A DNA stretch of 64,000 nucleotides from positions 1-64,000 of the IMG/VR virus record IMGVR_UViG_3300042350_004191; one strand, given 5' to 3'. Made by a program: the position numbers and the translations under genes. The notes beneath the pieces were generated by a model. The model was not told where the DNA came from, did no database searches, and worked only from the letters and a program-made list of their open reading frames with translations. Of the stretch, positions 17,020 to 33,684 are shown piece by piece; the first letter of the stretch is position 1, and every line of letters starts with the position of its first letter.

Positions 17020-17276
17020 GAAAATAAAATTCAATTGGAAAGATTTTTTTCTTTACATTTGGAAATCAAACAGTCGTTTAAGTTGGAAATTAAATTGTAA
17101 GACAATTAGAATTTTCTTGACTGACAAAGAAATTTTTAGTAGTCAAAATTTTTTGAAATAGAACAAGTAATCCGAAAATGTCAAGACTAAAATGATTGTC
17201 TTACGTTGTAAGTATTTGTGCCAGCCCGAATTAGAAACAAGACGTTGATTGTAAGACAAAGAGAAAGGCTGGACAC

Positions 17277-17305
17277 AAAGAAGGACGGGAGCAATCCCGT
17301 CCTTC
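17277..17305 (-). terminator. Terminator hairpin
   Basis: GAAGGACGGGA-GCAA-TCCCGTCCTTC perfect stem. Confidence 0.75.
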
Positions 17306-17530
17306 AAGTTTTAGAATGTAAGACGATTAGTTAGGGCTGTTGAGCATCTGGAGCTTCTGGTCTTTGAGACTGACCATATTATCTGCAAGGATGTTCAGTT
17401 TCGCCTCATGCTCTCGCAAGTGCTGGAGGAGGATGGAGATTGCGGATTTGGCTAATTCCATTTCCTCTTGGAGTCTTTCGATTTGTGTCATGGTGAAAGT
17501 GGGGAGAGGGTTTCCCCTCTCCCCATGATT

Positions 17531-18106
17531 TTAGTCGTGGAGTTGGATCAGATTCCCCTTCACTTTGATGCCAGCCATTTGCTCTGGCGTGAAGATGAAT
17601 TCGCGGAACCTCTCACGCTTGAAGCCGCACACCTTTTTGATGTGTTTCTTCGCCAGCGTCAGAGGACGCGAGTTAACGGGTTTCTTTGGATTGGTCGGAG
17701 GAGCGATTTGTTCCTTCTGTTCCCGAAACCCATACAGATGAATCGTTCCGCTTTCCTTGTGGAGCTTGATTCCATCCGAGATAATCTCGTAGGTATCCTC
17801 TCCGTTGTTTTTGTTTTGAGCCGCATGAACGTAGCTCCCAGAGACACCATTGGTGAGCGTTTGCGTCAGCGAGGCGAGCAATTCCGCTTTCGCTTTGGCT
17901 TCCAGATCGTTTTGCGGTTGGTATGCTTCCAGAGCAGCTTTGTCATGCTCACAGGCAGCTTTGTTGCTGATACCAAAGTTAAGCGTGTAGCGAGCCGTCT
18001 CGCCAGTGTCTTTGGTAACGTAGAGGAAGGAGATGAACGTGCAACCCTTCTTTGTGGCTTCCTCCAGAATTTCCAGAGGACTTTGTGTGTTGGTGTTATT
18101 TCTCAT
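17531..18106 (-). CDS. Early hypothetical protein
   Basis: 191-aa ORF with its own promoter and a downstream hairpin at 17501-17524. Confidence 0.75.
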   Translation of the reverse strand: MRNNTNTQSPLEILEEATKKGCTFISFLYVTKDTGETARYTLNFGISNKAACEHDKAALEAYQPQNDLEAKAKAELLASLTQTLTNGVSGSYVHAAQNKNNGEDTYEIISDGIKLHKESGTIHLYGFREQKEQIAPPTNPKKPVNSRPLTLAKKHIKKVCGFKRERFREFIFTPEQMAGIKVKGNLIQLHD

Positions 18107-18116
18107 AACAGGAAGG

Positions 18117-18145
18117 AGTATCGCATGGATTACTTGTAAGGTCGA
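18117..18145 (-). promoter_or_regulatory. Boxed early-type promoter
   Basis: TCGACC-ttacaagtaatccatgc-GATACT-ccttcctgtt-ATG. Confidence 0.75.
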
Positions 18146-18380
18146 GAAAATAAATCCGATTGGATTAAAATTTCTGAATGTCTTACAATCAACCTATCCA
18201 CATGGAATTCGATGGGATTGGAATTGTAAGACAATTAGATTTTGATTGTCTTACGATATATAAGTCAAAAAAAATTGTAAGACAATTGAGAACCAGATCG
18301 TAAGACATTCTTCGCCACTCGGTTTTGTCCGTGGGTTTAACCCACTGTCAAGGATCACCGAAAACCTATACGATTTGATT

Positions 18381-18686
18381 TTACTTTTTCGCTTCCATCG
18401 GAAGCTTCACGCAGTTGCAGAATTCCACATCTGCGAGTGCATCTTGCTCTGTCATGCTTCCCTCATCGATCATGTCTGAGTAGATGCAGACAGCAATCTC
18501 ACGGAGAGAAGAGGCTTTCATTTCCCAACCATTCCCCCAGTTGTTTCCATTGTTGGGAAGTTCCATGTCCCTCTTCGCATGAGAGCAAGTGGAAGCATGG
18601 ACACGGAAGGCTCCGTGTCTCCAGCTTGCAGGACCACAGACTTGTACGGACAGTTCTTTCGATTTGGTGATAGTAGGTGTTCTCAT
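18381..18686 (-). CDS. Early small Cys/His-containing protein
   Basis: ORF with its own promoter; HASTCSH...FCNC. Confidence 0.65.
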   Translation of the reverse strand: MRTPTITKSKELSVQVCGPASWRHGAFRVHASTCSHAKRDMELPNNGNNWGNGWEMKASSLREIAVCIYSDMIDEGSMTEQDALADVEFCNCVKLPMEAKK

Positions 18687-18696
18687 AACAGGAAAG

Positions 18697-18725
18697 AGTG
18701 TCGCACAAATTACTTGTAAGGTCGA
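18697..18725 (-). promoter_or_regulatory. Boxed early-type promoter
   Basis: TCGACC-ttacaagtaatttgtgc-GACACT-ctttcctgtt-ATG. Confidence 0.75.
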
Positions 18726-19064
18726 GAATAAAAACCGATTGGATTTAAGTTTCCAATTGTCCTACAATCGCTGAAAATTTTTGCCCTATATATGTAAGAC
18801 AATTAGATTTTGATTGTCTTACGAATTATTGGCTGTCTGAAAACCGTTGTTACCTGACACTATGATGCAACGTAACACGATGTTGAATTGTAAGACAATT
18901 AGATTTCCGAGCAAAGAAGAACCCCAAGGATTTCTCCTTGGGGTTTTGAGCTATTTGTTTTCTTCGTTTAGCTTCGCAACCTCATCGAGCCATGCTTCGT
19001 ATTCGGAAGCAAACTCATCGCTCTGCATGATGGTATTGAAGTCATCGGTGACTGGATTCATAAG

Positions 19065-19286
19065 CTATTCACCCCAATGGGAGATCCTGCAACGCATCAG
19101 ATAGCAAGTCTCATCGTGCCAGAAGTTACAGACAAAAACGCAGTTAGGGATAGGACCAATAGCTTCACTGCTGCGATCAATGAAGAGTCCCTGTTGCCAG
19201 CATTCATTACGAATGCCCCGATCTTTCCACCGAAGCGGAATGTATTGACTCCACCAAACTGAGTCGGTTGTGGTTTTAGTGCTCAT
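19065..19286 (-). CDS. Early hypothetical Trp/Cys-rich protein
   Basis: ORF with its own promoter; terminator hairpin at ~18914-18946. Confidence 0.6.
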   Translation of the reverse strand: MSTKTTTDSVWWSQYIPLRWKDRGIRNECWQQGLFIDRSSEAIGPIPNCVFVCNFWHDETCYLMRCRISHWGE

Positions 19287-19296
19287 AACAGGAATG

Positions 19297-19325
19297 AAAC
19301 TACTACGGATTACTTGTCAGCACAA
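19297..19325 (-). promoter_or_regulatory. Boxed early-type promoter
   Basis: TTGTGC-tgacaagtaatccgtag-TAGTTT-cattcctgtt-ATG. Confidence 0.7.
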
Positions 19326-19435
19326 GAAAAAAAACCAATTGGATTCAAATACCCGATTGTAAGACAATTAGAATATTATTGACAAAAGCAAAAAACCCCC
19401 ACCTTTCGGTGAGGGTCTTTTGTGATTCTTATCCC

Positions 19436-20482
19436 TTACTTGGTAGCGAGGATTGCTTCACGCCCAAGCTGCAAGATCTCTTTGCGACGAGCATCATTCG
19501 AGAGCATCGCAACAAACGCTTGCTTATGTTCAGCAGCACTACCCATCGCAGAGCGATAGAGGCGGCTACCTTGGGAGTTAGTGCGTCCAGTGCCATTGCC
19601 ATGAGTCCAAAACTCTGTTGCACCATTGGCAAGGTCATACAGGGTTTCGCCAGTGTTCCCGATACCACGCGCAAAGAGCAACGTGATTTCGTTTGCTGCA
19701 TTCACTGCGCGAGTCGAGAGTTCGACAGTGCCAGTGGTTTTGGCAAAGTATCCCATAGCCATTGCAAGGGCTTCGTTATTGTCAACCCTGCAAGAGGAGA
19801 GATACTCCATGACTTCGACCAGATTGGCGCGACCTTTGAGGATAGCGTTAACCAAGTCTCCGAGGTTTTCCATGGCGAGCTTCGCGTTCTTGGTATGGTA
19901 AACCTTGAAGCTAACATCACCCATTGCTTCCATCGACCAACGCAAGGTGTTCATGCAGATGATTCGGATGATCGAATCATAAACATTCATTGCAATGGTG
20001 CCATCATGGGAAGTGACAAAGTTCAAGTGGGCTTTGAATTTCTCTTTTCCACGCTTGTTGACTTTGACTTCCAGATCCGACCCATTCAGTGCAACACTGA
20101 TGGCGAATTTCTTCCCACGCTCCAGCGAGCAGATCGAGGAGATTTTGGCTCCCAAATCTTTGATCGCAGCTTCGAGGGTGTTCCAAACCTCTTCGTTTGA
20201 GATAGGCGTATAGCCAGCCTTGGGAATGTGCAGAGGCACAATCTGATCTACAACGTCGAGGTCATCGCGGCATTCGCGGTGATCCGCGAGCAGCACTTTA
20301 TACTTGTCCAAGGTGATCTGGCGACCATCCAAGTAGACAAGTGCAGGGGATTCAGCGACCTTGAAGAAGTGCTTTTTGGCAACCTCTCTGTCGATCACTT
20401 GACGGTGATTCGCCATCGTATGCCACTCAGTGCCTTCGATGGAGTCTACCATATCATGCGGTAATACTATTCCATGACTCAT
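19436..20482 (-). CDS. DUF932 (phage/plasmid-like, TIGR03299-type) protein
   Basis: SLERGKKF, TSHDGT, IRIICMNTL and HTKN motifs; terminator at 19390-19418. Confidence 0.8.
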   Translation of the reverse strand: MSHGIVLPHDMVDSIEGTEWHTMANHRQVIDREVAKKHFFKVAESPALVYLDGRQITLDKYKVLLADHRECRDDLDVVDQIVPLHIPKAGYTPISNEEVWNTLEAAIKDLGAKISSICSLERGKKFAISVALNGSDLEVKVNKRGKEKFKAHLNFVTSHDGTIAMNVYDSIIRIICMNTLRWSMEAMGDVSFKVYHTKNAKLAMENLGDLVNAILKGRANLVEVMEYLSSCRVDNNEALAMAMGYFAKTTGTVELSTRAVNAANEITLLFARGIGNTGETLYDLANGATEFWTHGNGTGRTNSQGSRLYRSAMGSAAEHKQAFVAMLSNDARRKEILQLGREAILATK

Positions 20483-20548
20483 ATATTTTGTGTCTTTCTT
20501 TTGTGTTTTGGTTAGTTAGCTGAATACTTCTTGCATTCAACTGTCCCT

Positions 20549-20577
20549 ATCCTAATTGAGATTACTTGTAAGTGCAA
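20549..20577 (-). promoter_or_regulatory. Boxed early-type promoter
   Basis: TTGCAC-ttacaagtaatctcaat-TAGGAT. Confidence 0.75.
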
Positions 20578-20882
20578 GTTTTATTTTCATTCTTTTTTAA
20601 TTAAATCCAATTGTCTTACAAATCGAGGTCAGTCTGTTTGTCTTACAAAGTGTTGACAATCAACAACATCCATCCGATTGTCTTACGATCTATTCACCTG
20701 TGAAAAAGGGAGGAAGATTTCTCCTCCTCCCTTTACCACTACACCACACACAAAACTTTATGAAGGCATATCCCAACCTTCATCGTATGCTTCTTTCCAT
20801 GCACGATAGTAATTGTATGCTGCCCATCCAATCACTGACAATGCACCAACAAGCACACCGAGGATAAATGAAATGAAAATAC

Positions 20883-21203
20883 TCATTCGGAAACTTCCAA
20901 TTTGGTTGGTTCGTAGTATTGATGTTGAGGCGCATCATACCATTCTTCTGTGGAGACTTCACCTTTGACCAGATCATATGTGATGTTGTCTCCGTAGTTG
21001 CTACCATCACCAGCACCCGAATAGGAATAGACTTCCCATGCCCAGTCTTCAATCTCTTGGGCGAAGTTGTTATTTTGTTCTGGTGCTAATCCAACGTGCA
21101 AATATCCTTCGTCACTTCCACCAGAAAACTCAAGGACGATTTGTTCGACTCCAAGTTTCTTGGCTTTGTTGTAGATTTTTTTAGATAGAGGTTGTGCTTC
21201 CAT
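20883..21203 (-). CDS. DUF6878-like protein
   Basis: VLEFSGGSDEG and GAGDG..YG.I motifs. Confidence 0.6.
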   Translation of the reverse strand: MEAQPLSKKIYNKAKKLGVEQIVLEFSGGSDEGYLHVGLAPEQNNNFAQEIEDWAWEVYSYSGAGDGSNYGDNITYDLVKGEVSTEEWYDAPQHQYYEPTKLEVSE

Positions 21204-21204
21204 G

Positions 21205-21588
21205 TTATTTGATTTCTAATTTGGTTGTTTGGGTTTTCTTGCCGACAGTCATCATCCACTTTGGAGGATTGTTAGTCAGCATGAAAAGGTAATCCTTTGG
21301 AGTCGGAATGAATCCGCAGTCTTCTTGGATATGTTGCTCCGCGAGCATCTTGGTAGGAATCTCCTGTCCATTGCTATTAGTGATAGCATGACCAAACTCT
21401 TTGATTGCCCATTGGATACCAGCAGAATGATGACGCAGTGCGCGATGAGTCCAATCTCCTGTGAAGGCTTTTGTTTCATCGAACCAGTCATGGAGTTCGA
21501 CGTAATCCATCGGATCGCCACCCCATTTAGAGGCTGATGATTGTGCGTGTTTGTAAGGTGTCATAGGATTTCGATTAGTTGTTTCCAA
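21205..21588 (-). CDS. DUF6915-like protein
   Basis: PYKHAQSSASKWGG, HDWFDETK, HRALRHH and EQHIQEDCG motifs. Confidence 0.7.
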   Translation of the reverse strand: METTNRNPMTPYKHAQSSASKWGGDPMDYVELHDWFDETKAFTGDWTHRALRHHSAGIQWAIKEFGHAITNSNGQEIPTKMLAEQHIQEDCGFIPTPKDYLFMLTNNPPKWMMTVGKKTQTTKLEIK

Positions 21589-21720
21589 GACCTTCTCGCA
21601 TTTTGAAATGATCTTCCATGTATCTTAATGCTTTTTCTTCATCAAAATTATAAGTCTCCATGACATACTGGACAGCCTCTTCAAAAGTCAATTCAGTATC
21701 GGGGTTGTTCCATTCTTTTT

Positions 21721-22305
21721 TCATTTGCTGTAAGACTTCCAGATTTCCAAATCCATGTCAGCAATATTCTTTCCTGCTTTTTCGCATTCGGAAATAAAAT
21801 CCAATTCAATTTTCCGATACTTCTTCTTGTTGGAAGGAGTTGCTTTCGGGACATTGTATCCCTTCTCTGACATATACTTGAGGATGTGTGTATCCAAGAC
21901 AGCAACCTTCATGTCTGGACGAGAGTGCAGGACAAAGAACCGAGATGTCTTGGGTCCGATTCCCTCTACGGATTCCAGTTCTTGGCAACTGACAGTATGA
22001 AGTCTTCCTTCAAACTGGAGAATGCCACGGAAAGCTTTTTCAATCCGATTGTATTGTCCGAGCTTGTAGTGCTTCAAACGTCCCACCAAGGTTCCAGAGT
22101 CAACCATAGCATCGTTATAGTTGACGAGGTAGCGCAACCATTTGAAAGGAGAAACCCCAATGACTCTGGATGTCCACAAAAACTGATTGAGTTTTTCTGC
22201 CTGTGTCTTTGCCGTCTTACCAGCAACGAGGATGGCAAACATGAGAAACTCTTCGAGTTCTTCTTGGGTTCGATTGTAGTTAGTGATGTCTGTTGGTGTT
22301 ATCAT
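21721..22305 (-). CDS. HhH DNA glycosylase, Ogg-like
   Basis: VEGIGPKTSRFF HhH; AVLDTHILK; DLEIW C-terminus. Confidence 0.75.
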   Translation of the reverse strand: MITPTDITNYNRTQEELEEFLMFAILVAGKTAKTQAEKLNQFLWTSRVIGVSPFKWLRYLVNYNDAMVDSGTLVGRLKHYKLGQYNRIEKAFRGILQFEGRLHTVSCQELESVEGIGPKTSRFFVLHSRPDMKVAVLDTHILKYMSEKGYNVPKATPSNKKKYRKIELDFISECEKAGKNIADMDLEIWKSYSK

Positions 22306-22315
22306 GGTGGTAGTG

Positions 22316-22343
22316 GTTGTATCAGATTAGTTGTAAAGGTCAA
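22316..22343 (-). promoter_or_regulatory. Boxed early-type promoter
   Basis: TTGACC-tttacaactaatctga-TACAAC. Confidence 0.6.
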
Positions 22344-22351
22344 GATTTATT

Positions 22352-22546
22352 TCAAACACAGTATGCTTCGAGTGCATCGAGTTTTTTGGCACAGATGAGA
22401 ACAAGCATTGCTTGAGTAATCTTTACTCCACACTTTGCTGTGTAACTCATAGGGATGTTGGGAAACTCTGGAGTGGAAACAGTCTCTCCGTCGAATACCA
22501 CAGGGAAAGCATCTCCTGCAATGTTTATCCAAATTGTTTTTTTCAT
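22352..22546 (-). CDS. Hypothetical protein
   Basis: ORF in operon. Confidence 0.5.
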   Translation of the reverse strand: MKKTIWINIAGDAFPVVFDGETVSTPEFPNIPMSYTAKCGVKITQAMLVLICAKKLDALEAYCV

Positions 22547-22774
22547 TTAGATTTTCTCCTTCACACGGATGAGTTCGTCTGCTGTGCGATAGGTGACTTT
22601 GGTGAGTTGCAACAAAGGTGCTTGGTCAACCTCGCCACCAGAAAGAATCTTCGTGATGCGATAGTCAACGCCATTGCTGATGACAGTATCACCCAATTCC
22701 AATTCGTTTCCTTCTTGGTCAAGGACAAATGGTTTACAATCTTCGTCGGATAGGTAGTAGTTGGTTTTTTTCAT
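22547..22774 (-). CDS. Hypothetical protein
   Basis: ORF in operon. Confidence 0.55.
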   Translation of the reverse strand: MKKTNYYLSDEDCKPFVLDQEGNELELGDTVISNGVDYRITKILSGGEVDQAPLLQLTKVTYRTADELIRVKEKI

Positions 22775-23010
22775 GGAAGGTCTTTATAGAATTTTAGAAC
22801 GCCTCGGTCAATAAGATTTTGCACTTCTCCACATTCAATCTTTCCACGCTCACCATCGGAATCAATGAACCACACGTTCCCATTTGGTGCTTCACTGGAC
22901 AGAAGAAGAACAGAGCCTTCTCTATGGTTTTTGTAAATCTGTGGATTGGGGTTATGAACATTGCTGTCGTATCCCAATTGAATTGGTTTTTGGACGATAT
23001 AGGATTTCAT
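22771..23010 (-). CDS. Hypothetical protein (start re-called at MKSYIVQ)
   Basis: The longer ORF call overlaps tRNA-Cys. Confidence 0.55.
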   Translation of the reverse strand: MKSYIVQKPIQLGYDSNVHNPNPQIYKNHREGSVLLLSSEAPNGNVWFIDSDGERGKIECGEVQNLIDRGVLKFYKDLP

Positions 23011-23027
23011 TTGGTTTTTAGTGGTTA

Positions 23028-23099
23028 AGCATCGTGTTGGATTTGAACCAACGTATAAGAGTTTTGCAGACTCTCGCCTTACCACTTGGCTAACGATGC
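23028..23099 (-). tRNA. tRNA-Cys(GCA)
   Basis: GCATCGT/ACGATGC acceptor stem, U73, anticodon arm AGAGT-CTGCAAA-ACTCT. Confidence 0.92.
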
Positions 23100-23114
23100 G
23101 TCAATGTGGCGAGC

Positions 23115-23143
23115 ATCATGCCCAAAATTACTTGTAAGGTCAA
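23115..23143 (-). promoter_or_regulatory. Boxed early-type promoter (drives tRNA-Cys)
   Basis: TTGACC-ttacaagtaattttggg-CATGAT. Confidence 0.75.
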
Positions 23144-23441
23144 ATCTTTTTTTAGGGGTCTGAGAGAATTCTCTGATTGTAAGACAATTAGATTTTCCTT
23201 GACTAAGAATTTATTTCTGATATTATCTATAACCTTTTGATTGTAAGACAATTAGATCTGATTGTCTTACATGTCGGCGTTCAACGACATTCAGGAATGT
23301 TGCCTAATGCCGACATCGGTATCACAAATTGTGATTTCAAAAACGTTTGCAAACAGACATGTATTATGTGTCTGTCTGCAAACAAAACAAAGAGGGTCGA
23401 GCCTTTCGACCCGACCCTCTTACCACTACTACCACCAAAAA

Positions 23442-23690
23442 CTATTTAGATTCTTTTTGTTTAGCTCTCAGCTTTTTTAATTTGTCCCAGAGTTTAGCAT
23501 GTTCAACATTAAAGCTCTGATATTCTTCATACAGTCCCTTATCGAGGAAGCATGAAATATTATCTCCTAAATCATCAACAAACTCCAAATCATCTACAAG
23601 AGTCAAAGCAACGTCATGAAGGTCAGACCAAACTTCTTCGAGCCTGTTTAACAATTCTTGTTCTTTCTTTTCAAATGTATTCTTTTTCAT
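23442..23690 (-). CDS. Hypothetical helical protein
   Basis: ORF; terminator hairpin at 23390-23421 follows. Confidence 0.55.
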   Translation of the reverse strand: MKKNTFEKKEQELLNRLEEVWSDLHDVALTLVDDLEFVDDLGDNISCFLDKGLYEEYQSFNVEHAKLWDKLKKLRAKQKESK

Positions 23691-23694
23691 GGTG

Positions 23695-23946
23695 TTAGCT
23701 ATTCAGCCAGTTGATGAACCTCATAGTAAAATGAGCAATGATATATATTTCAGCGATCACTGATAGTAAGACAATCAGATAAAAGCCCCTAACAATCCAG
23801 ATGTCTTTGTTCGAGTTAATCATATCTTGTATTATTTTTTTCCTTTCTTCTTGGATGTATTCTGATTCAAAACTGTATTTGGAAAGAGGCTCATTGTCCT
23901 CTCGCGTATGCGCGTGTGTGCGCTGTATTGAATCAGGGTGTTCCAT
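23695..23946 (-). CDS. Membrane protein (C-terminal TM)
   Basis: Hydrophobic C-terminal helix. Confidence 0.55.
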   Translation of the reverse strand: MEHPDSIQRTHAHTREDNEPLSKYSFESEYIQEERKKIIQDMINSNKDIWIVRGFYLIVLLSVIAEIYIIAHFTMRFINWLNS

Positions 23947-23963
23947 TTTAGCACAGTGTTGTA

Positions 23964-24125
23964 TTAATACCAGTAGTAGGCTCGAACACGATTTTGTTCA
24001 GGGTGTTTGGCGAGATTCGGTGTCTTAAAGACAGCCATTGCTTCTCGTTGCACCTGTCGTTCCCACCTACTGACAGATGAGCAACCAGCAGTTCCTAATA
24101 GTAAGACAATTAGAATAGTTTTCAT
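23964..24125 (-). CDS. Small lipoprotein (53 aa, not in ORF track)
   Basis: MKTILIVLLLGTAGCSSVSRW...; lipobox TAGC; overlaps the stop of the upstream gene. Confidence 0.65.
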   Translation of the reverse strand: MKTILIVLLLGTAGCSSVSRWERQVQREAMAVFKTPNLAKHPEQNRVRAYYWY

Positions 24126-26218: not shown

Positions 26219-26222
26219 TTTG

Positions 26223-26468: not shown

Positions 26469-26525
26469 AAAGTATTTGGTGGTTTGGGGTGGGAGAGAAT
26501 ATCCCTCCCACCCCTACCACTACTA

Positions 26526-27464
26526 CTACCAATTCTTCTTCACGAATTTTCCGTTGCTATCACGAACAGCGTAGTATTTCTGTCCGGTAGGTTTCTGTCC
26601 ATAGACACCACGCTCTCCATTAGAGAAGTCGTATTCGTCTTGCATCTCGTCCTCGTAGCTATCGTCATAGTCATCCTCATACTCTCCACCATTGGAGGAG
26701 TAGAGTGGAGCGTCCCATCCCGACTCGTCACGCTGAACCTTAGAACGCCAATCGTCCTTGTATTCAGCAACGACCTCGTAGCGACAGCACCGACCCTTGG
26801 TGTTGTTGTAATCAGCAGGGATGCTGACAACATCCTTGGGATTGATCTTGACGATGACAGTCTTTCCGTTCTCACCATCCGAGAAATTCGGAAGGTATTT
26901 GATGGAACAGAAGTGCAGACCTTGCGAGCAAGTCTGATCCTTGTCCTCACACACACGATTGCGAGGCATCTCACAGATAGAACCAACTTGATTGTTGAAG
27001 GTTCCAGAGTGAATGTCTGTCCAATCGCCACGGATATTCTTGAAGGCAAGGAAGCAACCATCTTCTGTGATGGGAAGCTCACCAGCCTCAAGGAAATCAT
27101 ACAACTCATCCACAGCACGTTTGCTTGGATTCTGCATGAGGTTGGCGAGGAATTTCACCATCGGTTGAAACGGCAAGTCATCGCGCATGAACGCGAGGAT
27201 GCGGTTGGTCAGTGTGTTGTGGATGATTTCACCATTGAAGGTGATAGCACCATCAGCAATCGCCACACCATCAGAGATGTATTGACTGACTTGGTTTCCA
27301 ATGTCCACAAGGTCAACGAAGCTCTCCCAATCGCCCATGCGAATAGCATCCAAGATGCCGTTGTATTTGGGATGATCAGTCTCGACCATATAGGACTTGC
27401 CATCTATCACAGCAGCGATCTTGCCGCTACCAGTGATTGTAACTGCGTTTGTGGTTGTAGCCAT
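26526..27464 (-). CDS. rIIB: RIIB-like protein
   Basis: NPS..AVDELYDFL, ITEDGCFLAFK, EMPRNRV..D...CSQGLH and VVSIPADY..KGRCCRY motifs; adjacent to rIIA. Confidence 0.9.
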   Translation of the reverse strand: MATTTNAVTITGSGKIAAVIDGKSYMVETDHPKYNGILDAIRMGDWESFVDLVDIGNQVSQYISDGVAIADGAITFNGEIIHNTLTNRILAFMRDDLPFQPMVKFLANLMQNPSKRAVDELYDFLEAGELPITEDGCFLAFKNIRGDWTDIHSGTFNNQVGSICEMPRNRVCEDKDQTCSQGLHFCSIKYLPNFSDGENGKTVIVKINPKDVVSIPADYNNTKGRCCRYEVVAEYKDDWRSKVQRDESGWDAPLYSSNGGEYEDDYDDSYEDEMQDEYDFSNGERGVYGQKPTGQKYYAVRDSNGKFVKKNW

Positions 27465-27501
27465 ATTTTCTATTTGGTTTTAGTGTTGTTGTTTCAGTTG
27501 G

Positions 27502-29499
27502 TTATTTCATCTCTGATGCCGCTTTCAGCACCAGATCATCCGACACTTGCCAACTATCAAGTGAAGAATAGAGCAACTTTACCAGATTGCTTGTAAAGGT
27601 CAAGCTGTTTTTCTCAGGTATTTTGATATAGTATCTGAGAGGAGCATATTTCTTGGCATACTCACAAGCACTATGAATGTCCAGTATGAATTTTTTGAAT
27701 TCGTTTGTATCTGACAAGGCAACGAACAGCTTGTTCTTCACAAGGCTATTGATCTTGCCACGATCCGGTGCATGGCTTGCCATCTTCAGCTTCTCAATGT
27801 CATAGTCAACAATGGTGTTGTTTATGACATCGTTGATAGGCTTACTACCGAGGGCTGCGATATGCTTGACATTACGCTCTGTCACCATACGGACATCGTG
27901 AATGTCGATGCCGAGGTATTCCAGAGCAGACCACAGATTGTCTTTGCGATTGAAGTTAGCGAGAACCTTGCCGTCTTTGTTCTTGAACGAACCAGCATCG
28001 AAATACCAGTCGTTAAGATTCTTGACCACATAGTATTTGGGAGCAGGTTCATTACCAGACAGATCAAATTGTTCTGCTTGGCAAGTGACGTTACCATCGT
28101 TACGAAGGAAGAACAGATTGATCACTCCCTTGAGGCGACCTTGACGAGTAACACGACCAGCAGATGCGCGGTTGGTGTTGACAGGATCAAGGTCAGAGGT
28201 CTTGTTGAAGATGTTGGCGGGGAAGCCAGCACCGATCAGATTGTTCATCTCGTCTTGAGTGACCAGATTGACAGAAGCATTTGAATTGGAATTCTGTCGA
28301 ATGAATTGGATCACACGCTTGTATGCACCACGCTTGAGGTCATCGTAATACCACAGAGCATTGTTATCCAAGGAAGCATAGCCAGACTCAGTATATTTTC
28401 TGCGACCATACATACGCTTGGAAACATTCTTGAGGTTGGGAGCATACGGATGGATGGAGCGGCGAGGCTCAGTAATGTCGATCTTGTTCCACATGACCTT
28501 ACCTTTGATCATACTGGAATTAAGGAACGACCATTGACCATGCAGCAAGTAAAGGGCTTTCATGGCATCCAAGAGGTTCGGAGAATCCTTGATGGTTTCC
28601 TCGACCTTTGCCAAGAAGTCTAACTTGACCTGTTCGATCTTGTCATTGAGTGCCTTGATCGTGGAAGGGCAATAGGACAGAGCCTCACGCGAAGGAACGA
28701 AATCCAATTCACCAATGTTGAAGGTGATCACCAGACCCGCCTTGCGAAGAATCTCATGGTGAGCATAGTCCATCTTGTAGCTGTCGATAGGATAGGTCAC
28801 ACCGCCCATGACAGCAAAGGACTGGTTCAGGCTATTGTAGGACTTCCAGAATCCACCAGTGAACATCGGCTTCTCATTGTCCCAATCAATCTTGCCACCG
28901 ACAATCGTAGGACGAACATCGAAGAAGCGGAATGATTTATAGACAGCTTGAATGAAATCATTGAAGTCTGTTTGCTTGACCGGAATCTGGATTGCTACAC
29001 CATTACTCTCAGTGGTCTTGTCCATAGACATGAGACTGATCGTAGGCATATTGTCAGCATTGAAGTAAGCATTGTAGATGCGCTTCTCTCCTTTGACAAT
29101 CGAAGTGATCGTGAAGTTATCCGTATAGCAGAAGGGAGATTTGCTACCCAATCCCAAGCAACCAATCTGTGAATTGGTGTTGGTCTTGGTCGAAGCAAAA
29201 TAGACAGCATAGATGTCGTAGATGTCCTCATGCTTGATGCCTGTGCCGAAGTCTTGGATAGTGAGCCAAGGTTCGATGGCATTAGGAAGGTGAATGAGGA
29301 AGGGCTGATTAGCCTTGCCAGCAGCAACCATCGAATCAGATGCGTTGCAGCCAAGCTCGCGGACAATAGCCAGAGGCTTGTCAGAGTAGAGGTCAGAAAG
29401 AATCTGGAACGCCTTACGCGAAGCCTTCATCTTGAATTGAGCCTCGTCAGTAATGTTTCCGATCTGTTCGATAGTGGTATCGGTATCGTTGATGATCAT
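27502..29499 (-). CDS. rIIA: RIIA-like protein (N-terminal GHKL/HATPase)
   Basis: LYSDKPLAIVREL..NA.DS, DFGTG, STK...IG.LGLGSKSPF and SREALSY motifs. Confidence 0.9.
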   Translation of the reverse strand: MIINDTDTTIEQIGNITDEAQFKMKASRKAFQILSDLYSDKPLAIVRELGCNASDSMVAAGKANQPFLIHLPNAIEPWLTIQDFGTGIKHEDIYDIYAVYFASTKTNTNSQIGCLGLGSKSPFCYTDNFTITSIVKGEKRIYNAYFNADNMPTISLMSMDKTTESNGVAIQIPVKQTDFNDFIQAVYKSFRFFDVRPTIVGGKIDWDNEKPMFTGGFWKSYNSLNQSFAVMGGVTYPIDSYKMDYAHHEILRKAGLVITFNIGELDFVPSREALSYCPSTIKALNDKIEQVKLDFLAKVEETIKDSPNLLDAMKALYLLHGQWSFLNSSMIKGKVMWNKIDITEPRRSIHPYAPNLKNVSKRMYGRRKYTESGYASLDNNALWYYDDLKRGAYKRVIQFIRQNSNSNASVNLVTQDEMNNLIGAGFPANIFNKTSDLDPVNTNRASAGRVTRQGRLKGVINLFFLRNDGNVTCQAEQFDLSGNEPAPKYYVVKNLNDWYFDAGSFKNKDGKVLANFNRKDNLWSALEYLGIDIHDVRMVTERNVKHIAALGSKPINDVINNTIVDYDIEKLKMASHAPDRGKINSLVKNKLFVALSDTNEFKKFILDIHSACEYAKKYAPLRYYIKIPEKNSLTFTSNLVKLLYSSLDSWQVSDDLVLKAASEMK

Positions 29500-29554
29500 G
29501 GTAGTAGTTTGTTTGTGGTTAGTTGTTGTAGTTGTATTTCATTTAACGTGGAGA

Positions 29555-29583
29555 AGTATGCCAGCGATTACTTGTAATGTCGA
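29555..29583 (-). promoter_or_regulatory. Boxed early-type promoter for rIIA-rIIB
   Basis: TCGACA-ttacaagtaatcgctgg-CATACT. Confidence 0.75.
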
Positions 29584-29673
29584 GAAATAATTTCGAGAAA
29601 GTTTTTGTTGGTGAGATAGTAATTCCTTGTAAAGTCAAGCTTTTTGTGATTGTCTTACAATCGGTGTTACGAA

Positions 29674-29708
29674 GAAAAAGAGCAGGGACTTTTGATCCCT
29701 GCTCTTTC
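29674..29708 (-). terminator. Terminator (possibly bidirectional)
   Basis: AAAGAGCAGGGA-CTTTTGA-TCCCTGCTCTTT. Confidence 0.8.
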
Positions 29709-30191
29709 TTGTTTTGTTTAGGGGGAAATTATCTGACCTTCAAATCATCCAGAATCATTGCTGGAAGATACTTCTGGTTGACAATGACAGTTAGTTCATC
29801 CATTCGAGTTTCAAGCTCTTTAATCTTTTTCGATTTGGCAAGACTCGAAAGCATCAGGACGAATACGATCAAAGTAATTGTGAATGAAAAAAGTATATCA
29901 GTTGTTTTCATTGTAGTCATGGTTCGAGTAATCGAGGTAATCATTGAACCGACCTTGCCGCTTGATCTGTTCGAGCCACGATTCATCCGTGAACTCAAAA
30001 ACTGATAGTGCGATAAACGAGGGTATCGTTGTTTTGCCAAACAGGTTGGCGATCTTCTCTATGATGTTGTGCATTGGATTTACTTTCTATTTGGTTTTTG
30101 TTGATGTTGTCCATGATCAGGAATGTAGTCCATCCGAATACGAATGCACCAGTTACCAGACCATAGGCAAAGGGTATGATGTTTTTCATGG

Positions 30192-30446
30192 TTAGTCAAT
30201 ACTTTCTGTTAGGAATTCTGGAATGTTTTGAATTGATGCTTCTGGTGCTTCAACAATGTCGAGAGCATCATACAGTTCATTGTATTTCACAAGACTGCAA
30301 AGATCTTCATAAAGACAATCTTTAGCGTGTTGAACCATGCTTTCATCATTCAGATCAACATAGTATCCCAAGTCTATATGAACCTTTCCCAATCTTGGAG
30401 CCTTGGGTAAGTCTTTGACACAATCGAATTCAAGTTGGCTATTCAT
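30192..30446 (-). CDS. Hypothetical protein
   Basis: ORF. Confidence 0.55.
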   Translation of the reverse strand: MNSQLEFDCVKDLPKAPRLGKVHIDLGYYVDLNDESMVQHAKDCLYEDLCSLVKYNELYDALDIVEAPEASIQNIPEFLTESID

Positions 30447-30491
30447 AGTATTGGTATGATATGATTTTTAATGTGGAATGTCAATTCTTTT

Positions 30492-30998
30492 TTAGCAGAG
30501 TTCCTTTTGAAGTTTCTTGGGTGCGCTCTTGATCGGAGAGTGTTCATGGTCGTGATTATGCAACCAGTTTGGATAGCTGAAGTATTCTCCGCAGAAGTCC
30601 ATACCTTCTTCGATATACGTCAAGCGAAACTCCCGACCAGTAAGCAGGGAAAGAGTTTTGACAATACCGATAGGAGGACTCCATGCGGTTTCAAAACCAA
30701 TACCAGTAGGTTCTGCATAGTAGACTTCACCGCCACCTTTGGTTCCCCAATTCTCCACGCACCAATCCCATGCGCTATCTGCACCATACTTGCGGATAAG
30801 TTTCTGACGCAACTCAAGTCGAAAGGCAGGGCTGTCGAGATTGTCATCCTTATCCGCTTTTTTGAGTGCGGTTGGGATGGGACGAATCTTTTGGAAAGAA
30901 AGGTTTCCCTTTTTGTCCATGTAGTCTTTGAGAACATCCAAGATAGAATCATTGGTATCCTCGTTTAACATTAGTGTATTGCTGCAATAGTTAGGCAT
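30492..30998 (-). CDS. DUF1281/YubB-type ferredoxin-like fold protein
   Basis: MPNYCSN, WCVENWGTK, FETAWSPP and Y.EEG..FCG motifs. Confidence 0.8.
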   Translation of the reverse strand: MPNYCSNTLMLNEDTNDSILDVLKDYMDKKGNLSFQKIRPIPTALKKADKDDNLDSPAFRLELRQKLIRKYGADSAWDWCVENWGTKGGGEVYYAEPTGIGFETAWSPPIGIVKTLSLLTGREFRLTYIEEGMDFCGEYFSYPNWLHNHDHEHSPIKSAPKKLQKELC

Positions 30999-31170
30999 GG
31001 TAGTATTTCTATTTGGTTTTTAATCTTCGAGTTCTTTCATGTTATCGACTACGATTTGACAAGCCATATCTTTGACTTCATCCAAGTATTCGACAAGACC
31101 GAATTGTGATTCGAGCATACAAATCAGGTCTTCCTGAATTTGTTCGCTGACTCTTGCTATTTGTTTTTTC

Positions 31171-31419
31171 TTACCCATTGAAGTATGTCTCCATTTCTTC
31201 TTTTGTTAGTGGTGTGATGTGTTCCACTTCCATGTCACTCATCTCGAATGATTGAAGTGAAGCAGCACCAGTTGTTTCGAGGAAGTTGTAGTCCAACTCT
31301 TGAATTGATCCGTCTGCATCTGTCTTGTTCTCCGCGATGACATCGAGAGAGAACGAGACTTTGTAGGTGTAGCGTTTCATGACAGGCGCGATTAGATCAA
31401 ATGTCGCTGTGCTCGTCAA
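31171..31419 (-). CDS. Hypothetical protein
   Basis: ORF in operon. Confidence 0.5.
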   Translation of the reverse strand: MTSTATFDLIAPVMKRYTYKVSFSLDVIAENKTDADGSIQELDYNFLETTGAASLQSFEMSDMEVEHITPLTKEEMETYFNG

Positions 31420-31726
31420 GAACTTTCTTTACGTAGTGCTCGACTTTGTTCCATGTCGTTCCCTCATTGGCATCCACATAGTTGTAGAGGTAATTGGAAA
31501 CAATCATTGCTTCGCGGGTAGTGAGATCTCTTGGAGCCTTGGCACAATAGTCTTCAGGTGTCCAGACTTCGAGATAGCATTCAGGATACTTTTGTTGAAG
31601 AGCAAAGAGTTCGGTTAGGAAATCCTGTTTACTACCAAACCCCTTTCCATAGTCCTGATCAGGATAGACCTCTTCGACTACTTGACGGATTTTCTTTTTG
31701 TTTACTTTTGGTTTCATGGTTTTCAT
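31397..31726 (-). CDS. Hypothetical protein
   Basis: ORF in operon. Confidence 0.6.
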   Translation of the reverse strand: MKTMKPKVNKKKIRQVVEEVYPDQDYGKGFGSKQDFLTELFALQQKYPECYLEVWTPEDYCAKAPRDLTTREAMIVSNYLYNYVDANEGTTWNKVEHYVKKVLDEHSDI

Positions 31727-31739
31727 TTGGTTTAATTGT

Positions 31740-32204
31740 TTATCCTACTTTCCAGTATCCATAGACACATCGTTTGCCGTCCCTCGAACAATTGTGGGTA
31801 TCATGAATGACCCCATCAATAAGGGCGACTAAGTGTTTGGAGACACTGAGAATGTATCGACCATGCATTGGAACCTCATAGGGTTTCATGTGAGCAGTGC
31901 AACCCGTTCCGATTCCCATGATAGGTGTCCACTTGGCTCCCATATGATCCATGATCTTCTTAATGGTGTTACGATAAACGCCTGATCGAGCCGAAGACTT
32001 GCCACGTTTGCGTTTACCTGTCCTTTCATTCGAGGACATCTTATTCACAAACTCATAGACTTCGAGGTAGTTCTTTTGAAAAGCAATTGAGATTGCTCGA
32101 ACAACACAGTCACCCGCAGATCCTTTGAATCCTGCTTCGTGTCTGCCCCCGTCATTGTATTGGAAGGCGAGTTGGTTATTCATCGGAACCCTCCTGCTTG
32201 GCAA
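31740..32204 (-). CDS. Conserved phage hypothetical protein
   Basis: YNDGGR..AGFKG..GDCVVRAISIA and H....IDG..HDT motifs. Confidence 0.7.
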   Translation of the reverse strand: MPSRRVPMNNQLAFQYNDGGRHEAGFKGSAGDCVVRAISIAFQKNYLEVYEFVNKMSSNERTGKRKRGKSSARSGVYRNTIKKIMDHMGAKWTPIMGIGTGCTAHMKPYEVPMHGRYILSVSKHLVALIDGVIHDTHNCSRDGKRCVYGYWKVG

Positions 32205-32367
32205 AGTCGAGGAGCAACTTTCTCAGTTGATTCCTTCGCATTACTGCTTCGAGGGTTTCGTCGTATTGAAGCTGTTCGGAGAATAGTTCTCGAATAGCTT
32301 GTTTGATTTCGGTGGTAGTCATAGGCTGTCCTTTGTATCAGATTACTTGTAAAGGTCAAGAAAAAAA

Positions 32368-32458
32368 TGCAGGGTATGGGAATCGAACCCATGCTCGTCC
32401 CTCATCTAGGGAACACAGATTATAAGTCTGTCGGTGCTTCCAGTTACACTAACCCTGC
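32368..32458 (-). tRNA. tRNA-Ile(UAU) with long variable arm (91 nt)
   Basis: GCAGGGT/ACCCTGC-A acceptor; anticodon arm ACAGA-CTTATAA-TCTGT; variable arm GTTCCCT-AGATG-AGGGAC. Confidence 0.85.
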
Positions 32459-32467
32459 TGGAAATTG

Positions 32468-32540
32468 TGGGGCGGGAGGGAGTCGAACCCCCAACCAAGC
32501 GATTATGAGCCGCCTGCTCTAACCATTGAGCTACCACCCC
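32468..32540 (-). tRNA. tRNA-Ile2(CAU, lysidine type); elongator Met less likely
   Basis: GGTTAGAGCAGGCGGCTCATAATCGCTTGGT closely resembles bacterial ileX-type tRNA as recalled. Confidence 0.8.
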
Positions 32541-32558
32541 AAATAAAATGTAAAAGAG

Positions 32559-32632
32559 CGTCTCCATCTGGGATCGAACCAGAAACCTACAGCTTAGAAG
32601 GCTGTTGCTCTATCCAGTTGAGCTATGGAGAC
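32559..32632 (-). tRNA. tRNA-Arg(UCU)
   Basis: Anticodon arm ACAGC-CTTCTAA-GCTGT. Confidence 0.93.
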
Positions 32633-32638
32633 AAAGGG

Positions 32639-32721
32639 TAGCGAAGGTGGGACTCGAACCCACACGCTGTTGCCAGCAACGGATTTTAAGTCCGTTGTGT
32701 CTGCCATTTCACCACTTCGCC
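32639..32721 (-). tRNA. tRNA-Leu(UAA)
   Basis: Anticodon arm ACGGA-CTTAAAA-TCCGT; long variable arm. Confidence 0.93.
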
Positions 32722-32730
32722 ATAAAGTTT

Positions 32731-32919
32731 TCATCCTCTTAAAAGTCTTTTGATATCACATTTGCATTTAGCATAGTGAGGGCATCCATTGCAATACCTG
32801 TAATTGTCGAGATAGATATCTGGACGGATACAAGTTTCATGTAGGAGAGGTTTATCATCACCAGTCTCGGAAAGGATTTTACTGGTAATATCGTATTTCG
32901 GTTTTCGTTTGCGACCCAT
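32731..32919 (-). CDS. Small Cys-rich protein
   Basis: C...CNGCPHY..CKC. Confidence 0.55.
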   Translation of the reverse strand: MGRKRKPKYDITSKILSETGDDKPLLHETCIRPDIYLDNYRYCNGCPHYAKCKCDIKRLLRG

Positions 32920-33173
32920 ATTACTGTTAATCTGATTTACTCGTAAAATCTTAGATTACTAATAAAAGTTTTACAAGTAAAAAATTCAGATAGTTTTACA
33001 GGTTATAAGGATTATGAGTAAAAGTTCCATTACAATTAATCCAATTGGAACTGTTTTATATTTCTGGTTACATGTAATTTCGAGCATCGTCTTCATAACA
33101 AGTAAATTAGGGAGGGACAATTACAATTAAAAATCAATCGAATTATAATTAATCCCTCCCTATTTATGTTAGA

Positions 33174-33401
33174 TTAAGCCCACTCAGGACCAATCAGTTG
33201 AACACCACTCTTACCCAAGCGAGCCTTATAAACAGACTCACCTTCTTCCTTAGAGTTACGGGCAACTCTACGTGAGGGCATTAACAGTGCATTTTGAAGC
33301 TTACGAGTATAGTCATAACGACGATCCTTGTGAAGGAATTCACCAGTCTCATTGTTACGAACAACCCACATAAGCTTATTCGTCTTTTTGGTTTTGTTCA
33401 T
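33174..33401 (-). CDS. Early hypothetical basic protein
   Basis: Promoter at 33412-33440, TTGACA-tgacaagtaatctatag-TAATCT. Confidence 0.65.
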   Translation of the reverse strand: MNKTKKTNKLMWVVRNNETGEFLHKDRRYDYTRKLQNALLMPSRRVARNSKEEGESVYKARLGKSGVQLIGPEWA

Positions 33402-33684
33402 ATCGGCCCTAAGATTACTATAGATTACTTGTCATGTCAATGAGTTTTTTCAAAATACTTTCGGATCCCCAATTGTAAGACAATCAGTTTTTTCTTGACA
33501 CAGGACTCGATTTTTAGTAGGAACTAAATTGTAAGACAATCATTTTTTCCTTGACTTGTATTCAGATTTTTAGTAGCCAGAAATCTCTTTGTCTTACAAT
33601 CTACTGGTTCTATTTGAGATTTAAATCCTATTTTAATTGGATTTTACTGATTGTAAGACATTCAGTTTGTAAGACAATCAATTA

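What the first reader, a model, noticed from the sequence alone, without database searches (positions are those of the whole stretch)
17095..33680. TTGTAAGACAAT box family confined to the early region, often exactly 10 nt upstream of a TTGAC hexamer
Seen: about 27 intergenic copies in both orientations, all between 17.1 and 33.7 kb. I found no intergenic copies in the other ~47 kb. Seven copies show fixed geometry box-N10-TTGAC[A/T]: + strand at 17095, 19357, 23177, 33473 and 33529; - strand in the units at 17180-17205 and 29634-29660. Three of these (17095, 33473, 33529), up to 16 kb apart, extend to box-N10-TTGACw-N9-ATTTTTAGTAG. Inference: this is the site of a phage-encoded DNA-binding protein placed at an activator-like position (~-50). 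The extra copies may serve as loading, condensation or decoy sites on the first-expressed DNA. Its reverse complement shares the CTTACAA core with the promoter spacer box, so one protein might read both.
Basis: partly seen in the sequence, partly recalled or inferred. Interest (0 to 1): 0.75.

Follow-up and report, generated by a model that had tools for sequence, protein, structure and literature searches.

The report
Operator boxes in phage early-gene cassettes
A 12-base box repeated 28 times between the small early operons of an uncultured freshwater T4-like phage is real, confined to that region and kept by selection. It looks like the binding site of a phage regulator built into the terminator-promoter cassettes that this phage lineage also uses to shuffle genes.

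Summary
The window is the first 64 kb of a 210.6-kb T4-type phage genome from lake water. Of 30 copies of TTGTAAGACAAT with at most one mismatch in the whole genome, 27 lie between 17,095 and 33,678 (p about 5e-27). With an intact core, 28 of 31 copies in that region are non-coding. The box-N10-TTGAC geometry (7 of 28, p about 4e-14) and the three longer units are also real.

All genes here are on the minus strand, and five of the seven TTGAC hexamers face the other way. The systematic layout is: operon, terminator, one to five boxes, promoter, next operon. The nearest box lies 30-33 nt upstream of the -35 of a gene-strand promoter class (TYGACC-TTACAAGTAAT-N6-(-10)).

In related phages the boxes are 92% conserved against 62% for neighbouring non-coding DNA. 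Strain-to-strain gene swaps break at the boxes and promoters. These are therefore PeSL-like cassettes with an added operator.

The best candidate binder is a 77-aa ribbon-helix-helix protein (14915-15148). A variant box next to its own -35 is invariant in four relatives. Binding, its sign and transcription start sites remain untested.

The parts
33473..33678 (.). Box cluster of five copies: 33473+, 33529+, 33588-, 33651+, 33667+. It lies upstream of the cassette promoter of gene 33174-33401. The first two copies carry N10-TTGACw-N9-GATTTTTAGTAG on the + strand.
29649..29660 (-). Single exact box, 16 nt after hairpin 29677-29707 and 10 nt upstream of the -35 TTGACT of the first of two tandem rIIA promoters.
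26007..26018 (+). Single exact box in the 70-nt gap between genes 26018-26218 and 25612-25947. No cassette promoter is next to it.
23177..23272 (.). Box cluster: 23177+ and the inverted pair 23241+/23261-. It lies between terminator 23390-23421 and the cassette promoter that drives tRNA-Cys. It also encloses a + strand promoter-like site, TTGACT-16-TATTAT (23199-23226).
20610..20688 (-). Three boxes in the same orientation (20610, 20637, 20677), between terminator 20709-20727 and the promoter of the DUF932 gene. All three are kept in L146, L150 and L152 while the spacers between them diverge.
19357..19368 (+). Single exact box, 20 nt after terminator 19389-19422 and 31 nt upstream of the -35 of the promoter of gene 19065-19286.
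18756..18899 (.). Box cluster: 18756-, inverted pair 18792+/18813-, 18888+. It lies between terminator 18920-18945 and the promoter of gene 18381-18686.
18177..18309 (.). Box cluster: 18177-, inverted pair 18224+/18245-, 18275+, 18298+. It lies upstream of the promoter of gene 17531-18106.
17095..17327 (.). Box cluster: 17095+, 17195-, 17249+, 17316+. It lies around terminator 17280-17305 and upstream of the promoter at 16985-17019.
15194..15205 (+). Variant box: ATTGTCCTACAT on the gene strand, 6 nt upstream of the -35 of the RHH gene's promoter. It is invariant in four diverged relatives.
14915..15148 (-). 77-aa predicted ribbon-helix-helix protein, the candidate box-binding regulator. It is transcribed from a promoter of the same cassette class.
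15153..33440 (-). Fourteen gene-strand promoters of the class TYGACC-TTACAAGTAAT-N6-(-10), with the ATG about 10 nt after the -10. The low coordinate of the spacer box is at 15171, 15875, 17003, 18129, 18709, 19309, 20561, 22326, 23127, 27586, 29567, 29622, 32342 and 33424. Two more lie at 38200 and 45127.
15289..29707 (-). Predicted intrinsic terminator hairpins that end the small operons, at 15289-15316, 17280-17305, 17499-17526, 18920-18945, 19389-19422, 20709-20727, 23390-23421 and 29677-29707. The first box follows about 20 nt after several of them.

Best explanation
The boxes are operators of a regulator dedicated to the early, hyperplastic region of an uncultured freshwater T4-type phage.

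Placement. Each box sits in the non-coding gap between the terminator of one small early operon and the promoter of the next. It is therefore an extra module of PeSL-like terminator-promoter cassettes.

The site. The core is a 13-bp near palindrome, ATTGTA-A-GACAAT, with a one-sided YAGAWTTT extension. Copies often form inverted pairs 20-21 bp apart. The copy nearest a promoter lies 30-33 nt upstream of the -35 of the gene-strand promoter class TYGACC-TTACAAGTAAT-N6-(-10). That promoter itself contains a box-like TTGTAAG core.

The binder. The most likely binder is the 77-aa ribbon-helix-helix protein encoded at 14915-15148. It is made from the same promoter class and has a variant box abutting its own -35.

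The effect. As the protein accumulates it would occupy the boxes and tune the early promoters. I think it more likely limits or shuts them off, and feeds back on itself, but the sign is unresolved.

Side effect. The boxes and promoter cores are the longest identical stretches shared by otherwise unrelated gaps. They are therefore also where related phages recombine and swap gene cassettes.

Shown: distribution, geometry, selective conservation, mosaic breakpoints. Inferred: protein binding, the identity of the binder, the regulatory sign.
For: - Confinement and non-coding enrichment.
- Regular order of gene, terminator, boxes, promoter, gene in nine gaps.
- Sharp motif edges. Eight core positions are invariant or nearly so in 28 copies, and the flanks are unconserved.
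- Box positions are 92% identical between the window and L152, against 62% for other non-coding positions (Fisher p 2e-14). Upstream of the DUF932 gene three boxes are kept in four phages while the spacers between them are scrambled.
- Relatives from other samples carry 6-21 boxes per contig.
- Over the distinct promoter contexts of the window and its relatives, the nearest box is 30-33 nt from the -35 in 18 of the 27 that have a box within 120 nt. This holds even where the intervening sequence differs. The other distances (10, 44-45, 65, 75) fit an 11-bp phase.
- A more distant relative (G003, rIIA 57-59% identical) has a cluster of a related box, TTGTAATACATT, at the syntenic place.
- The candidate protein: language-model neighbours with a family name are all RHH. 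The AlphaFold model is strand-helix-helix with core pLDDT 75-90. The variant box at its promoter is invariant in four relatives whose upstream DNA is otherwise unalignable.
- Strain contigs break at box edges (17093, 17193, 18768, 19352/19355, 19372, 20614) and at promoter spacer boxes (18127/8 in three runs, 18707, 20573). Synteny with relatives changes at the same modules.
Against: - There is no binding, expression or start-site evidence of any kind. No RNA run was listed and the complex prediction was not folded.
- The RHH assignment fails Pfam, PDB sequence search and Foldseek significance (best E 0.8).
- Co-occurrence of the RHH gene with the boxes is not independent evidence, because the relatives were found through that gene.
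- Operators centred near -72 are unusual for a plain repressor.
- Part of the box conservation could come from gene conversion between cassettes.
- Two of the four aligned gaps are nearly identical throughout, so the conservation contrast rests mostly on two gaps.
Confidence: 0.55

Rival explanations
1. The boxes have no binder of their own. They are simply the best-conserved patches of PeSL-type terminator-promoter cassettes, kept alike by recombination and gene conversion. Their only role is as homology for cassette shuffling.
For: - Joints and loose ends of strain contigs fall at boxes and promoter cores.
- Indels between relatives are bounded by them.
- PeSLs in T4-type phages are known to recombine in this way (PMC2839356, PMC4122927).
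Against: - Conservation stops abruptly at the 12-20 bp box, whereas homology-driven conversion should carry the flanks along.
- The boxes occur in both orientations and in variable numbers.
- Their distance to the -35 is kept across unrelated intervening sequence.
- A variant box is fixed at one particular promoter.
Confidence: 0.15
2. The box is an activator site centred near -50 of promoters whose -35 is the TTGAC hexamer 10 nt downstream on the same strand. The other copies are loading or decoy sites.
For: - Seven units share the exact N10 spacing (p 4e-14).
- The unit at 23177 has a good TG-extended -10. It is invariant in L146 and L150 and is followed by conserved hairpins.
- The unit at 29649 is a gene-strand rIIA promoter.
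- The units at 33473 and 33529 point toward iterons and an AT-rich stretch.
Against: - Five of the seven units point away from every gene.
- Three have -10 regions without the final T.
- In one unit (19357) the TTGACA runs straight into a terminator stem.
- TTGAC occupies the slot of the partner half-box TTGTC of the inverted pairs.
- The ATTTTTAGTAG tail is absent from the counterpart unit in L152.
- Twenty-one of the 28 boxes lack this geometry.
Confidence: 0.15
3. The boxes are sites for a host protein, such as a global regulator or nucleoid protein, that the phage recruits to its early region.
For: - No phage protein with a recognised DNA-binding profile was found. HTH_3, RHH_1 and Sigma70_r4 are all negative.
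- The sites must act before or while the first phage proteins are made.
Against: - The host is unknown, so this could not be tested.
- The related phage G003 uses a different box sequence. That fits a co-evolving phage protein better than a conserved host factor.
- The box matches no host operator consensus that I could recall. This is memory only, not a test.
Confidence: 0.1
4. The box acts through its own sequence. Either it serves as a -10 element (TACAAT on one strand, GACAAT on the other), or, in the inverted pairs, as an RNA hairpin.
For: - The consensus scan repeatedly picks TACAAT inside the box as a -10, with TTGTCA 18 nt upstream at 19385-19356.
- The inverted pairs would form 10-12 bp stems.
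Against: - There is no orientation bias toward the gene strand (17 against 11).
- The conserved letters of the partner hexamer are TTGAC on the box strand, not the first letters of a -35 on the other strand.
- Most boxes are unpaired.
- The stems are invariant, so there is no compensatory change to support an RNA structure.
Confidence: 0.05

Closest known systems
PeSL (promoter-early stem-loop) cassettes of T4-type phages (Arbiol et al. 2010, PMC2839356; Comeau et al. 2014, PMC4122927)
   Same: - Composite terminator stem-loop plus sigma-70-like promoter plus start codon.
- Many copies in the ORFan-rich hyperplastic early region of a T4-type genome.
- Insertions, deletions and replacements between close relatives are bounded by the elements.
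   Different: - Here a discrete 12-20 bp near-palindromic box, in one to five copies and in either orientation, lies between the stem-loop and the promoter. Published PeSLs are described as having only an AT-rich stretch there.
- The promoter has an 11-nt conserved spacer block.
- There is no Shine-Dalgarno sequence.
- Mini-circles were not tested.
Ribbon-helix-helix repressors with repeated operators: P22 Arc and Mnt, plasmid CopG, and omega of pSM19035 with its heptad arrays (from my own knowledge of the literature)
   Same: - A small strand-helix-helix protein.
- Operators built of short repeated or palindromic subsites in direct or inverted order.
- Several promoters under one protein.
- A site at the protein's own promoter.
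   Different: - No significant sequence or fold match to any of them.
- About 28 sites are spread over 18 kb of a lytic T4-type phage.
- Most sites lie upstream of, rather than over, the core promoter.
- Binding is unproven.
T4 middle promoters with the MotA box and MotA/AsiA (from my own knowledge)
   Same: A phage-specific conserved block replaces or extends the -35 region of a sigma-70 -10 promoter class in the pre-replicative genes of a T4-type phage.
   Different: - The block is TTACAAGTAAT, not TGCTT.
- A fair -35 is retained.
- No MotA domain was found, although that search had no positive control.
- The finding's box is a separate upstream element.
Dispersed operator regulons of mobile elements, such as the P1 C1 operators and the KorB sites of IncP plasmids (from my own knowledge)
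   Same: One short operator is repeated at many promoters across a defined part of a mobile genome, at variable distances from the promoters.
   Different: Those systems belong to temperate or plasmid maintenance circuits and use different protein folds. Here the setting is the early region of a lytic-type phage.

Membership tests
PeSL cassettes of T4-type phages | The genome is a T4-type phage | tested here: met
   Gp23 capsid family E 1.6e-91. T4 portal family E 2.4e-97. rIIA and rIIB found by PHROGs.
PeSL cassettes of T4-type phages | A stem-loop terminator just upstream of the promoter | tested here: met
   Seven of the nine box-bearing gaps begin with a scan-detected intrinsic terminator. 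The gap at 18107-18380 has only a weak hairpin, and no terminator was detected for the gap at 33402-34153.
PeSL cassettes of T4-type phages | A sigma-70-like -35/N17/-10 early promoter | tested here: inconclusive
   Sixteen gene-strand copies of TYGACC-N17-(-10) are present. The -10 hexamers are weak (GATACT, TAGTCT), and there are no start-site data.
PeSL cassettes of T4-type phages | A Shine-Dalgarno sequence and start codon at the 3' end | tested here: not met
   The start codon follows about 10 nt after the -10. No Shine-Dalgarno sequence is seen before any of the gene starts inspected (13-37 kb and the larger genes at 46-70 kb).
PeSL cassettes of T4-type phages | Concentrated in a hyperplastic, ORFan-rich region, and bounding indels between close relatives | tested here: met
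   Most island proteins have no Pfam or PHROG family. Breakpoints fall at the cassettes.
PeSL cassettes of T4-type phages | Mini-circle formation by recombination between neighbouring elements | not testable with these tools
   This needs inverse PCR on infected cells or virions.
Ribbon-helix-helix repressor-operator systems | The protein has the strand-helix-helix fold | tested here: inconclusive
   The AlphaFold model has strand 21-24 and helices 25-38 and 42-56, with core pLDDT 75-90. Language-model neighbours are RHH_1/3/9. Pfam RHH_1 is negative. The best Foldseek matches (TCP, CopG, Arc) have E of 0.8 or worse.
Ribbon-helix-helix repressor-operator systems | An operator at the protein's own promoter | tested here: met
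   A variant box lies 6-7 nt upstream of the -35 and is invariant in four relatives. This is sequence-level evidence only.
Ribbon-helix-helix repressor-operator systems | The protein binds the repeated sites | not testable with these tools
T4 MotA-dependent middle promoters | A MotA box (TGCTT) at -30 and a MotA homologue | tested here: not met
   The spacer block is TTACAAGTAAT. The MotA_activ search was empty, but its control was also empty.

The most novel reading that the evidence does not exclude
The box and its small binding protein form a dedicated cassette-mobilisation system. Under this reading the boxes are recombination sites recognised by a helper protein that promotes excision and insertion of promoter-gene-terminator cassettes. 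That would be an integron-like gene-capture device inside a lytic phage's early region, and the 'targeted helper' that the PeSL authors speculated about.
Probability: 0.08. Interest if true: 0.85.

Novelty: new variant of a known kind. Interest (0 to 1): 0.5.

Why it matters
PeSL cassettes are the accepted explanation for how T4-type phages shuffle their accessory early genes. They have been described only as promoter plus terminator. Here the cassettes of an abundant, uncultured lake phage lineage carry an extra, selectively maintained operator and a plausible small regulator.

This suggests that newly captured genes are plugged into a common regulatory circuit as well as into a promoter. It gives a concrete, cheap test: one 77-aa protein and one 20-bp site. 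That test probes early-gene control in a phage group with no cultured member.

It also offers sequence landmarks for tracing cassette exchange in metagenomes.

Tried and rejected
- Megablast of the island against cultured phages found no match. The closest cultured rIIA proteins are about 33% identical.
- Two scans of viral contigs, for box-N10-TTGAC and for the 16-mer box, returned only single chance hits, apart from the withheld own genome.
- The one metagenome scan, for the inverted box pair, found only an unrelated hairpin family.
- Literature search for the box and spacer strings found nothing relevant.
- An RNA-run search listed none, so start sites could not be mapped.
- Profile searches of the genome for MotA, HTH_3, RHH_1 and sigma region 4 were all empty.
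- The complex prediction of four RHH copies with box DNA was counted but not folded. It is no evidence either way.
- I tried to tie the RHH protein to the different box of G003:
  - Its 28-kb fragment has no RHH homologue.
  - Contigs sharing its box have none either.
  - The only distant homologue lies on a 920-nt contig with no DNA held.
- The protein at 33174-33401 beside the largest cluster gave no lead.
- I considered that the GC island was an assembly chimera and rejected it. Independent contigs cross its left edge, and relatives share the composition.


Full report
SETTING

The window is the first 64 kb of a 210,586-bp virus record rated 99% complete. The genome encodes a Gp23-family capsid protein (E 1.6e-91), a T4-type portal (E 2.4e-97), and rIIA and rIIB (27502-29499 and 26526-27464, minus strand). 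It is therefore a T4-type phage.

It is found in more than twenty lake and freshwater metagenome runs. It is far from any cultured phage: megablast finds no match, and the best cultured rIIA is about 33% identical.

From position 1 to about 46 kb nearly all genes are on the minus strand. None of the gene starts inspected has a Shine-Dalgarno sequence.

THE OBSERVATION

- There are 30 copies of TTGTAAGACAAT with at most one mismatch in the whole genome, and 27 lie between 17095 and 33678. The binomial p is 5e-27.
- The box is the commonest 12-mer in the genome.
- Requiring an intact GTAAGAC or GTAGGAC core, 31 of 33 matches lie in 15.0-33.7 kb. Of these, 28 are in the 20% of that stretch that is non-coding (p 5e-17).
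- The three coding matches have mismatches. Two of them spell Ile-Val-Leu-Leu.
- Box-N10-TTGAC occurs at the seven named places. Offset 10 is the only enriched offset (p 4e-14).
- The three longer units, with N9-ATTTTTAGTAG, are as described.

ANATOMY OF THE BOX

The 28 non-coding copies align to a consensus of about 20 nt: purine, A, TTGTAAGACAAT, then YAGA and a T-rich tail. Positions 3-10 are invariant or nearly so, and there is no conservation beyond the edges.

The core is a 13-bp near palindrome, ATTGTA-A-GACAAT. This explains why both orientations occur.

Three inverted pairs (18224/18245, 18792/18813, 23241/23261) place two boxes 20-21 bp apart, start to start.

In those pairs the partner's TTGTC sits 9-10 nt after the first box. 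That is the same slot where the seven N10 units have TTGAC. Altogether 13 of 28 boxes have TTG(A/T)C at that place.

ANATOMY OF THE SURROUNDINGS

Read in the direction of the genes, the region is a regular series: genes, an intrinsic terminator hairpin, one to five boxes, a promoter, the next genes.

The promoters form a class of sixteen, all on the gene strand. Fourteen lie between 15.1 and 33.4 kb and two at 38.2 and 45.1 kb. Their form is TYGACC, then the conserved block TTACAAGTAAT, six more bases, a weak -10, and the ATG about 10 nt later. One of them drives tRNA-Cys.

Nine gaps with such a promoter and room upstream carry at least one box. One gap, upstream of the promoter at 15875, does not.

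In six window promoters the nearest box lies 30-33 nt upstream of the -35, in either orientation.

RELATIVES

Homologues of the small protein at 14915-15148 led to early-region contigs of related phages from other samples (L146-L153). They carry 6-21 boxes each and the same promoter class.

Conservation of the boxes:
- Upstream of the DUF932 gene three boxes are kept in four phages, while the DNA between them is scrambled.
- Over four aligned gaps between the window and L152, identity is 92% at box positions, 81% at promoter positions and 62% at other non-coding positions (Fisher p 2e-14).
- Two of these four gaps are nearly identical throughout, so the contrast comes mostly from the other two.

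Distance to the promoter. I pooled the distinct promoter contexts of the window and its relatives. The nearest box is 30-33 nt from the -35 in 18 of the 27 that have a box within 120 nt. This holds even where the intervening sequence is unrelated. The remaining values (10, 44-45, 65, 75) fit an 11-bp phase. With so few independent values the phasing is only suggestive.

A more distant relative. G003 is a 28-kb fragment with rIIA 57-59% identical. It has no TTGTAAGACAAT. Instead it has a cluster of a related near-palindromic box, TTGTAATACATT. The cluster lies about 3.5 kb upstream of rIIA, the place that corresponds to the largest cluster here.

MOSAICISM

I laid the contigs of four other lake runs on 17050-20750.
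- Joints run from box to box: 17122 to 19352, 17122 to 19355 with 34 inserted letters like those at 23205-23238, and 18768 back to 17193 with a further box inserted.
- Loose ends fall at box edges (17093, 19372, 20614) and at promoter spacer blocks (18127/8 in three runs, 18707, 20573).
- By my own tally of the positions listed in that output, about 25 of 37 breakpoints fall in the 35% of the stretch that is non-coding.

Synteny with L149, L150 and L152 changes at the same modules. For example, two whole operons present here are absent from L150. One end of that break lies about 20 nt beyond the box at 19357, and homology resumes exactly at the box at 18177.

This is the behaviour described for PeSL cassettes in T4-type phages (PMC2839356, PMC4122927).

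THE CANDIDATE BINDER

No phage protein matches a DNA-binding profile.

The 77-aa product of 14915-15148 has these properties:
- All its language-model neighbours with a family name are ribbon-helix-helix families.
- It has a conserved core typical of that fold.
- Its AlphaFold model is strand-helix-helix with core pLDDT 75-90.
- Foldseek puts TCP, CopG and Arc among the best matches, but without significance.
- Its promoter is of the cassette class.
- A variant box, ATTGTCCTACAT on the gene strand, abuts its -35 and is invariant in four relatives whose upstream DNA otherwise cannot be aligned.

This fits autoregulation, which is typical of such proteins. It is also what one would see if some other factor regulated this gene.

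MECHANISM

I conclude that the boxes are operators kept by selection, built into PeSL-like cassettes, and probably read by the RHH protein.

The sign of regulation is open.
- For repression: the family's usual role, the site next to the protein's own -35, and the TTGAC hexamers lying in a half-site slot.
- For activation: the upstream, phased position and the weak core promoters.

As a consequence of their identity, the boxes are also the crossover points for cassette exchange.

Most of them are doubtful.
- Five of the seven face away from all genes.
- Three have -10 regions without the final T.
- One, at 19357, runs straight into a terminator stem.

Two cases deserve follow-up.
- The unit at 23177 has a good TG-extended -10 and is invariant in relatives. 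It is followed by conserved hairpins (fold z-score -9.65).
- The tandem units at 33473 and 33529 point at five 21-22 bp iterons and an AT-rich stretch. That layout would suit an origin primed by transcription.

LIMITS

There is no RNA evidence, no binding evidence and no known host. Relatives with boxes were found through the candidate gene, so their co-occurrence proves nothing.

Noticed in passing
window 14000-32000: This is a GC island (0.42-0.47 against 0.29-0.34 on both sides) that coincides with the box and promoter region. Relatives share it (L146 0.43, L152 0.46, G003 rIIA segment 0.415), and independent contigs L148 and L149 cross its left edge. It is therefore a lineage feature of the early genes, not a chimera.
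   Followed up: partly
window 33684-33930: Five iterons of ATTCAAACGATTGTTT at 21-22 bp spacing are followed by a very AT-rich stretch. They lie just downstream, on the + strand, of the two tandem box-N10-TTGACw units. This may be a replication origin.
   Followed up: partly
window 23199-23345 (+ strand): A promoter-like site, TTGACT-16-TATTAT with an upstream TG, is flanked by boxes and invariant in L146 and L150. It is followed by conserved hairpins. The RNA fold of 23233-23430 has z-score -9.65. This may be a small + strand RNA.
   Followed up: partly
gene starts inspected at 13-37 kb and 46-70 kb of the genome: None of the gene starts inspected has a Shine-Dalgarno sequence. Upstream regions are A/C-rich, and in the cassette promoters the -10 hexamer is only about 10 nt from the ATG. 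This implies near-leaderless mRNAs and a host that does not rely on Shine-Dalgarno pairing.
   Followed up: no
window 15148, 18106, 18686, 19286 (gene starts, minus strand): Genes behind cassette promoters begin alike (Met-Arg-Asn-x-Thr-x-Thr, with ACC/ACA-rich codons). Either the cassette extends into the first codons, or this reflects selection on initiation.
   Followed up: no
window 683-1144: The phage carries a full-length tmRNA gene (Rfam 143 bits; tag ADEEMLLAA) and eight tRNA genes in the window.
   Followed up: no
window 23028-23143: tRNA-Cys sits alone in the early region and is driven by a cassette promoter with boxes upstream. In L146 and L150 the nearest box is 44-45 nt from the -35 instead of 33 nt, about one helical turn more.
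   Followed up: partly
G003 contig 8400-8800 (held as L009 and L157): A distant relative has 35-bp tandem repeats carrying the related box TTGTAATACATT, plus TGTGTTACAT palindromes. They lie upstream of a small gene and an ATP-dependent-ligase-like gene.
   Followed up: partly
L123, L125-L128, L130, L133, L136, L137, L141-L143: An unrelated family of long hairpins in metagenome contigs has the stem GTAAGACAAT/ATTGTCTTAC extended by conserved flanks (GAAAGTG ... CAAACTTTTGG). These contigs have no similarity to this phage.
   Followed up: no
window 18161, 18737, 19335, 33041, 33633: A second short palindromic element, AATCCAATYGGATT, lies between the proximal box and the -35 in several cassettes. 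Its right half resembles the right half of the extended box.
   Followed up: no
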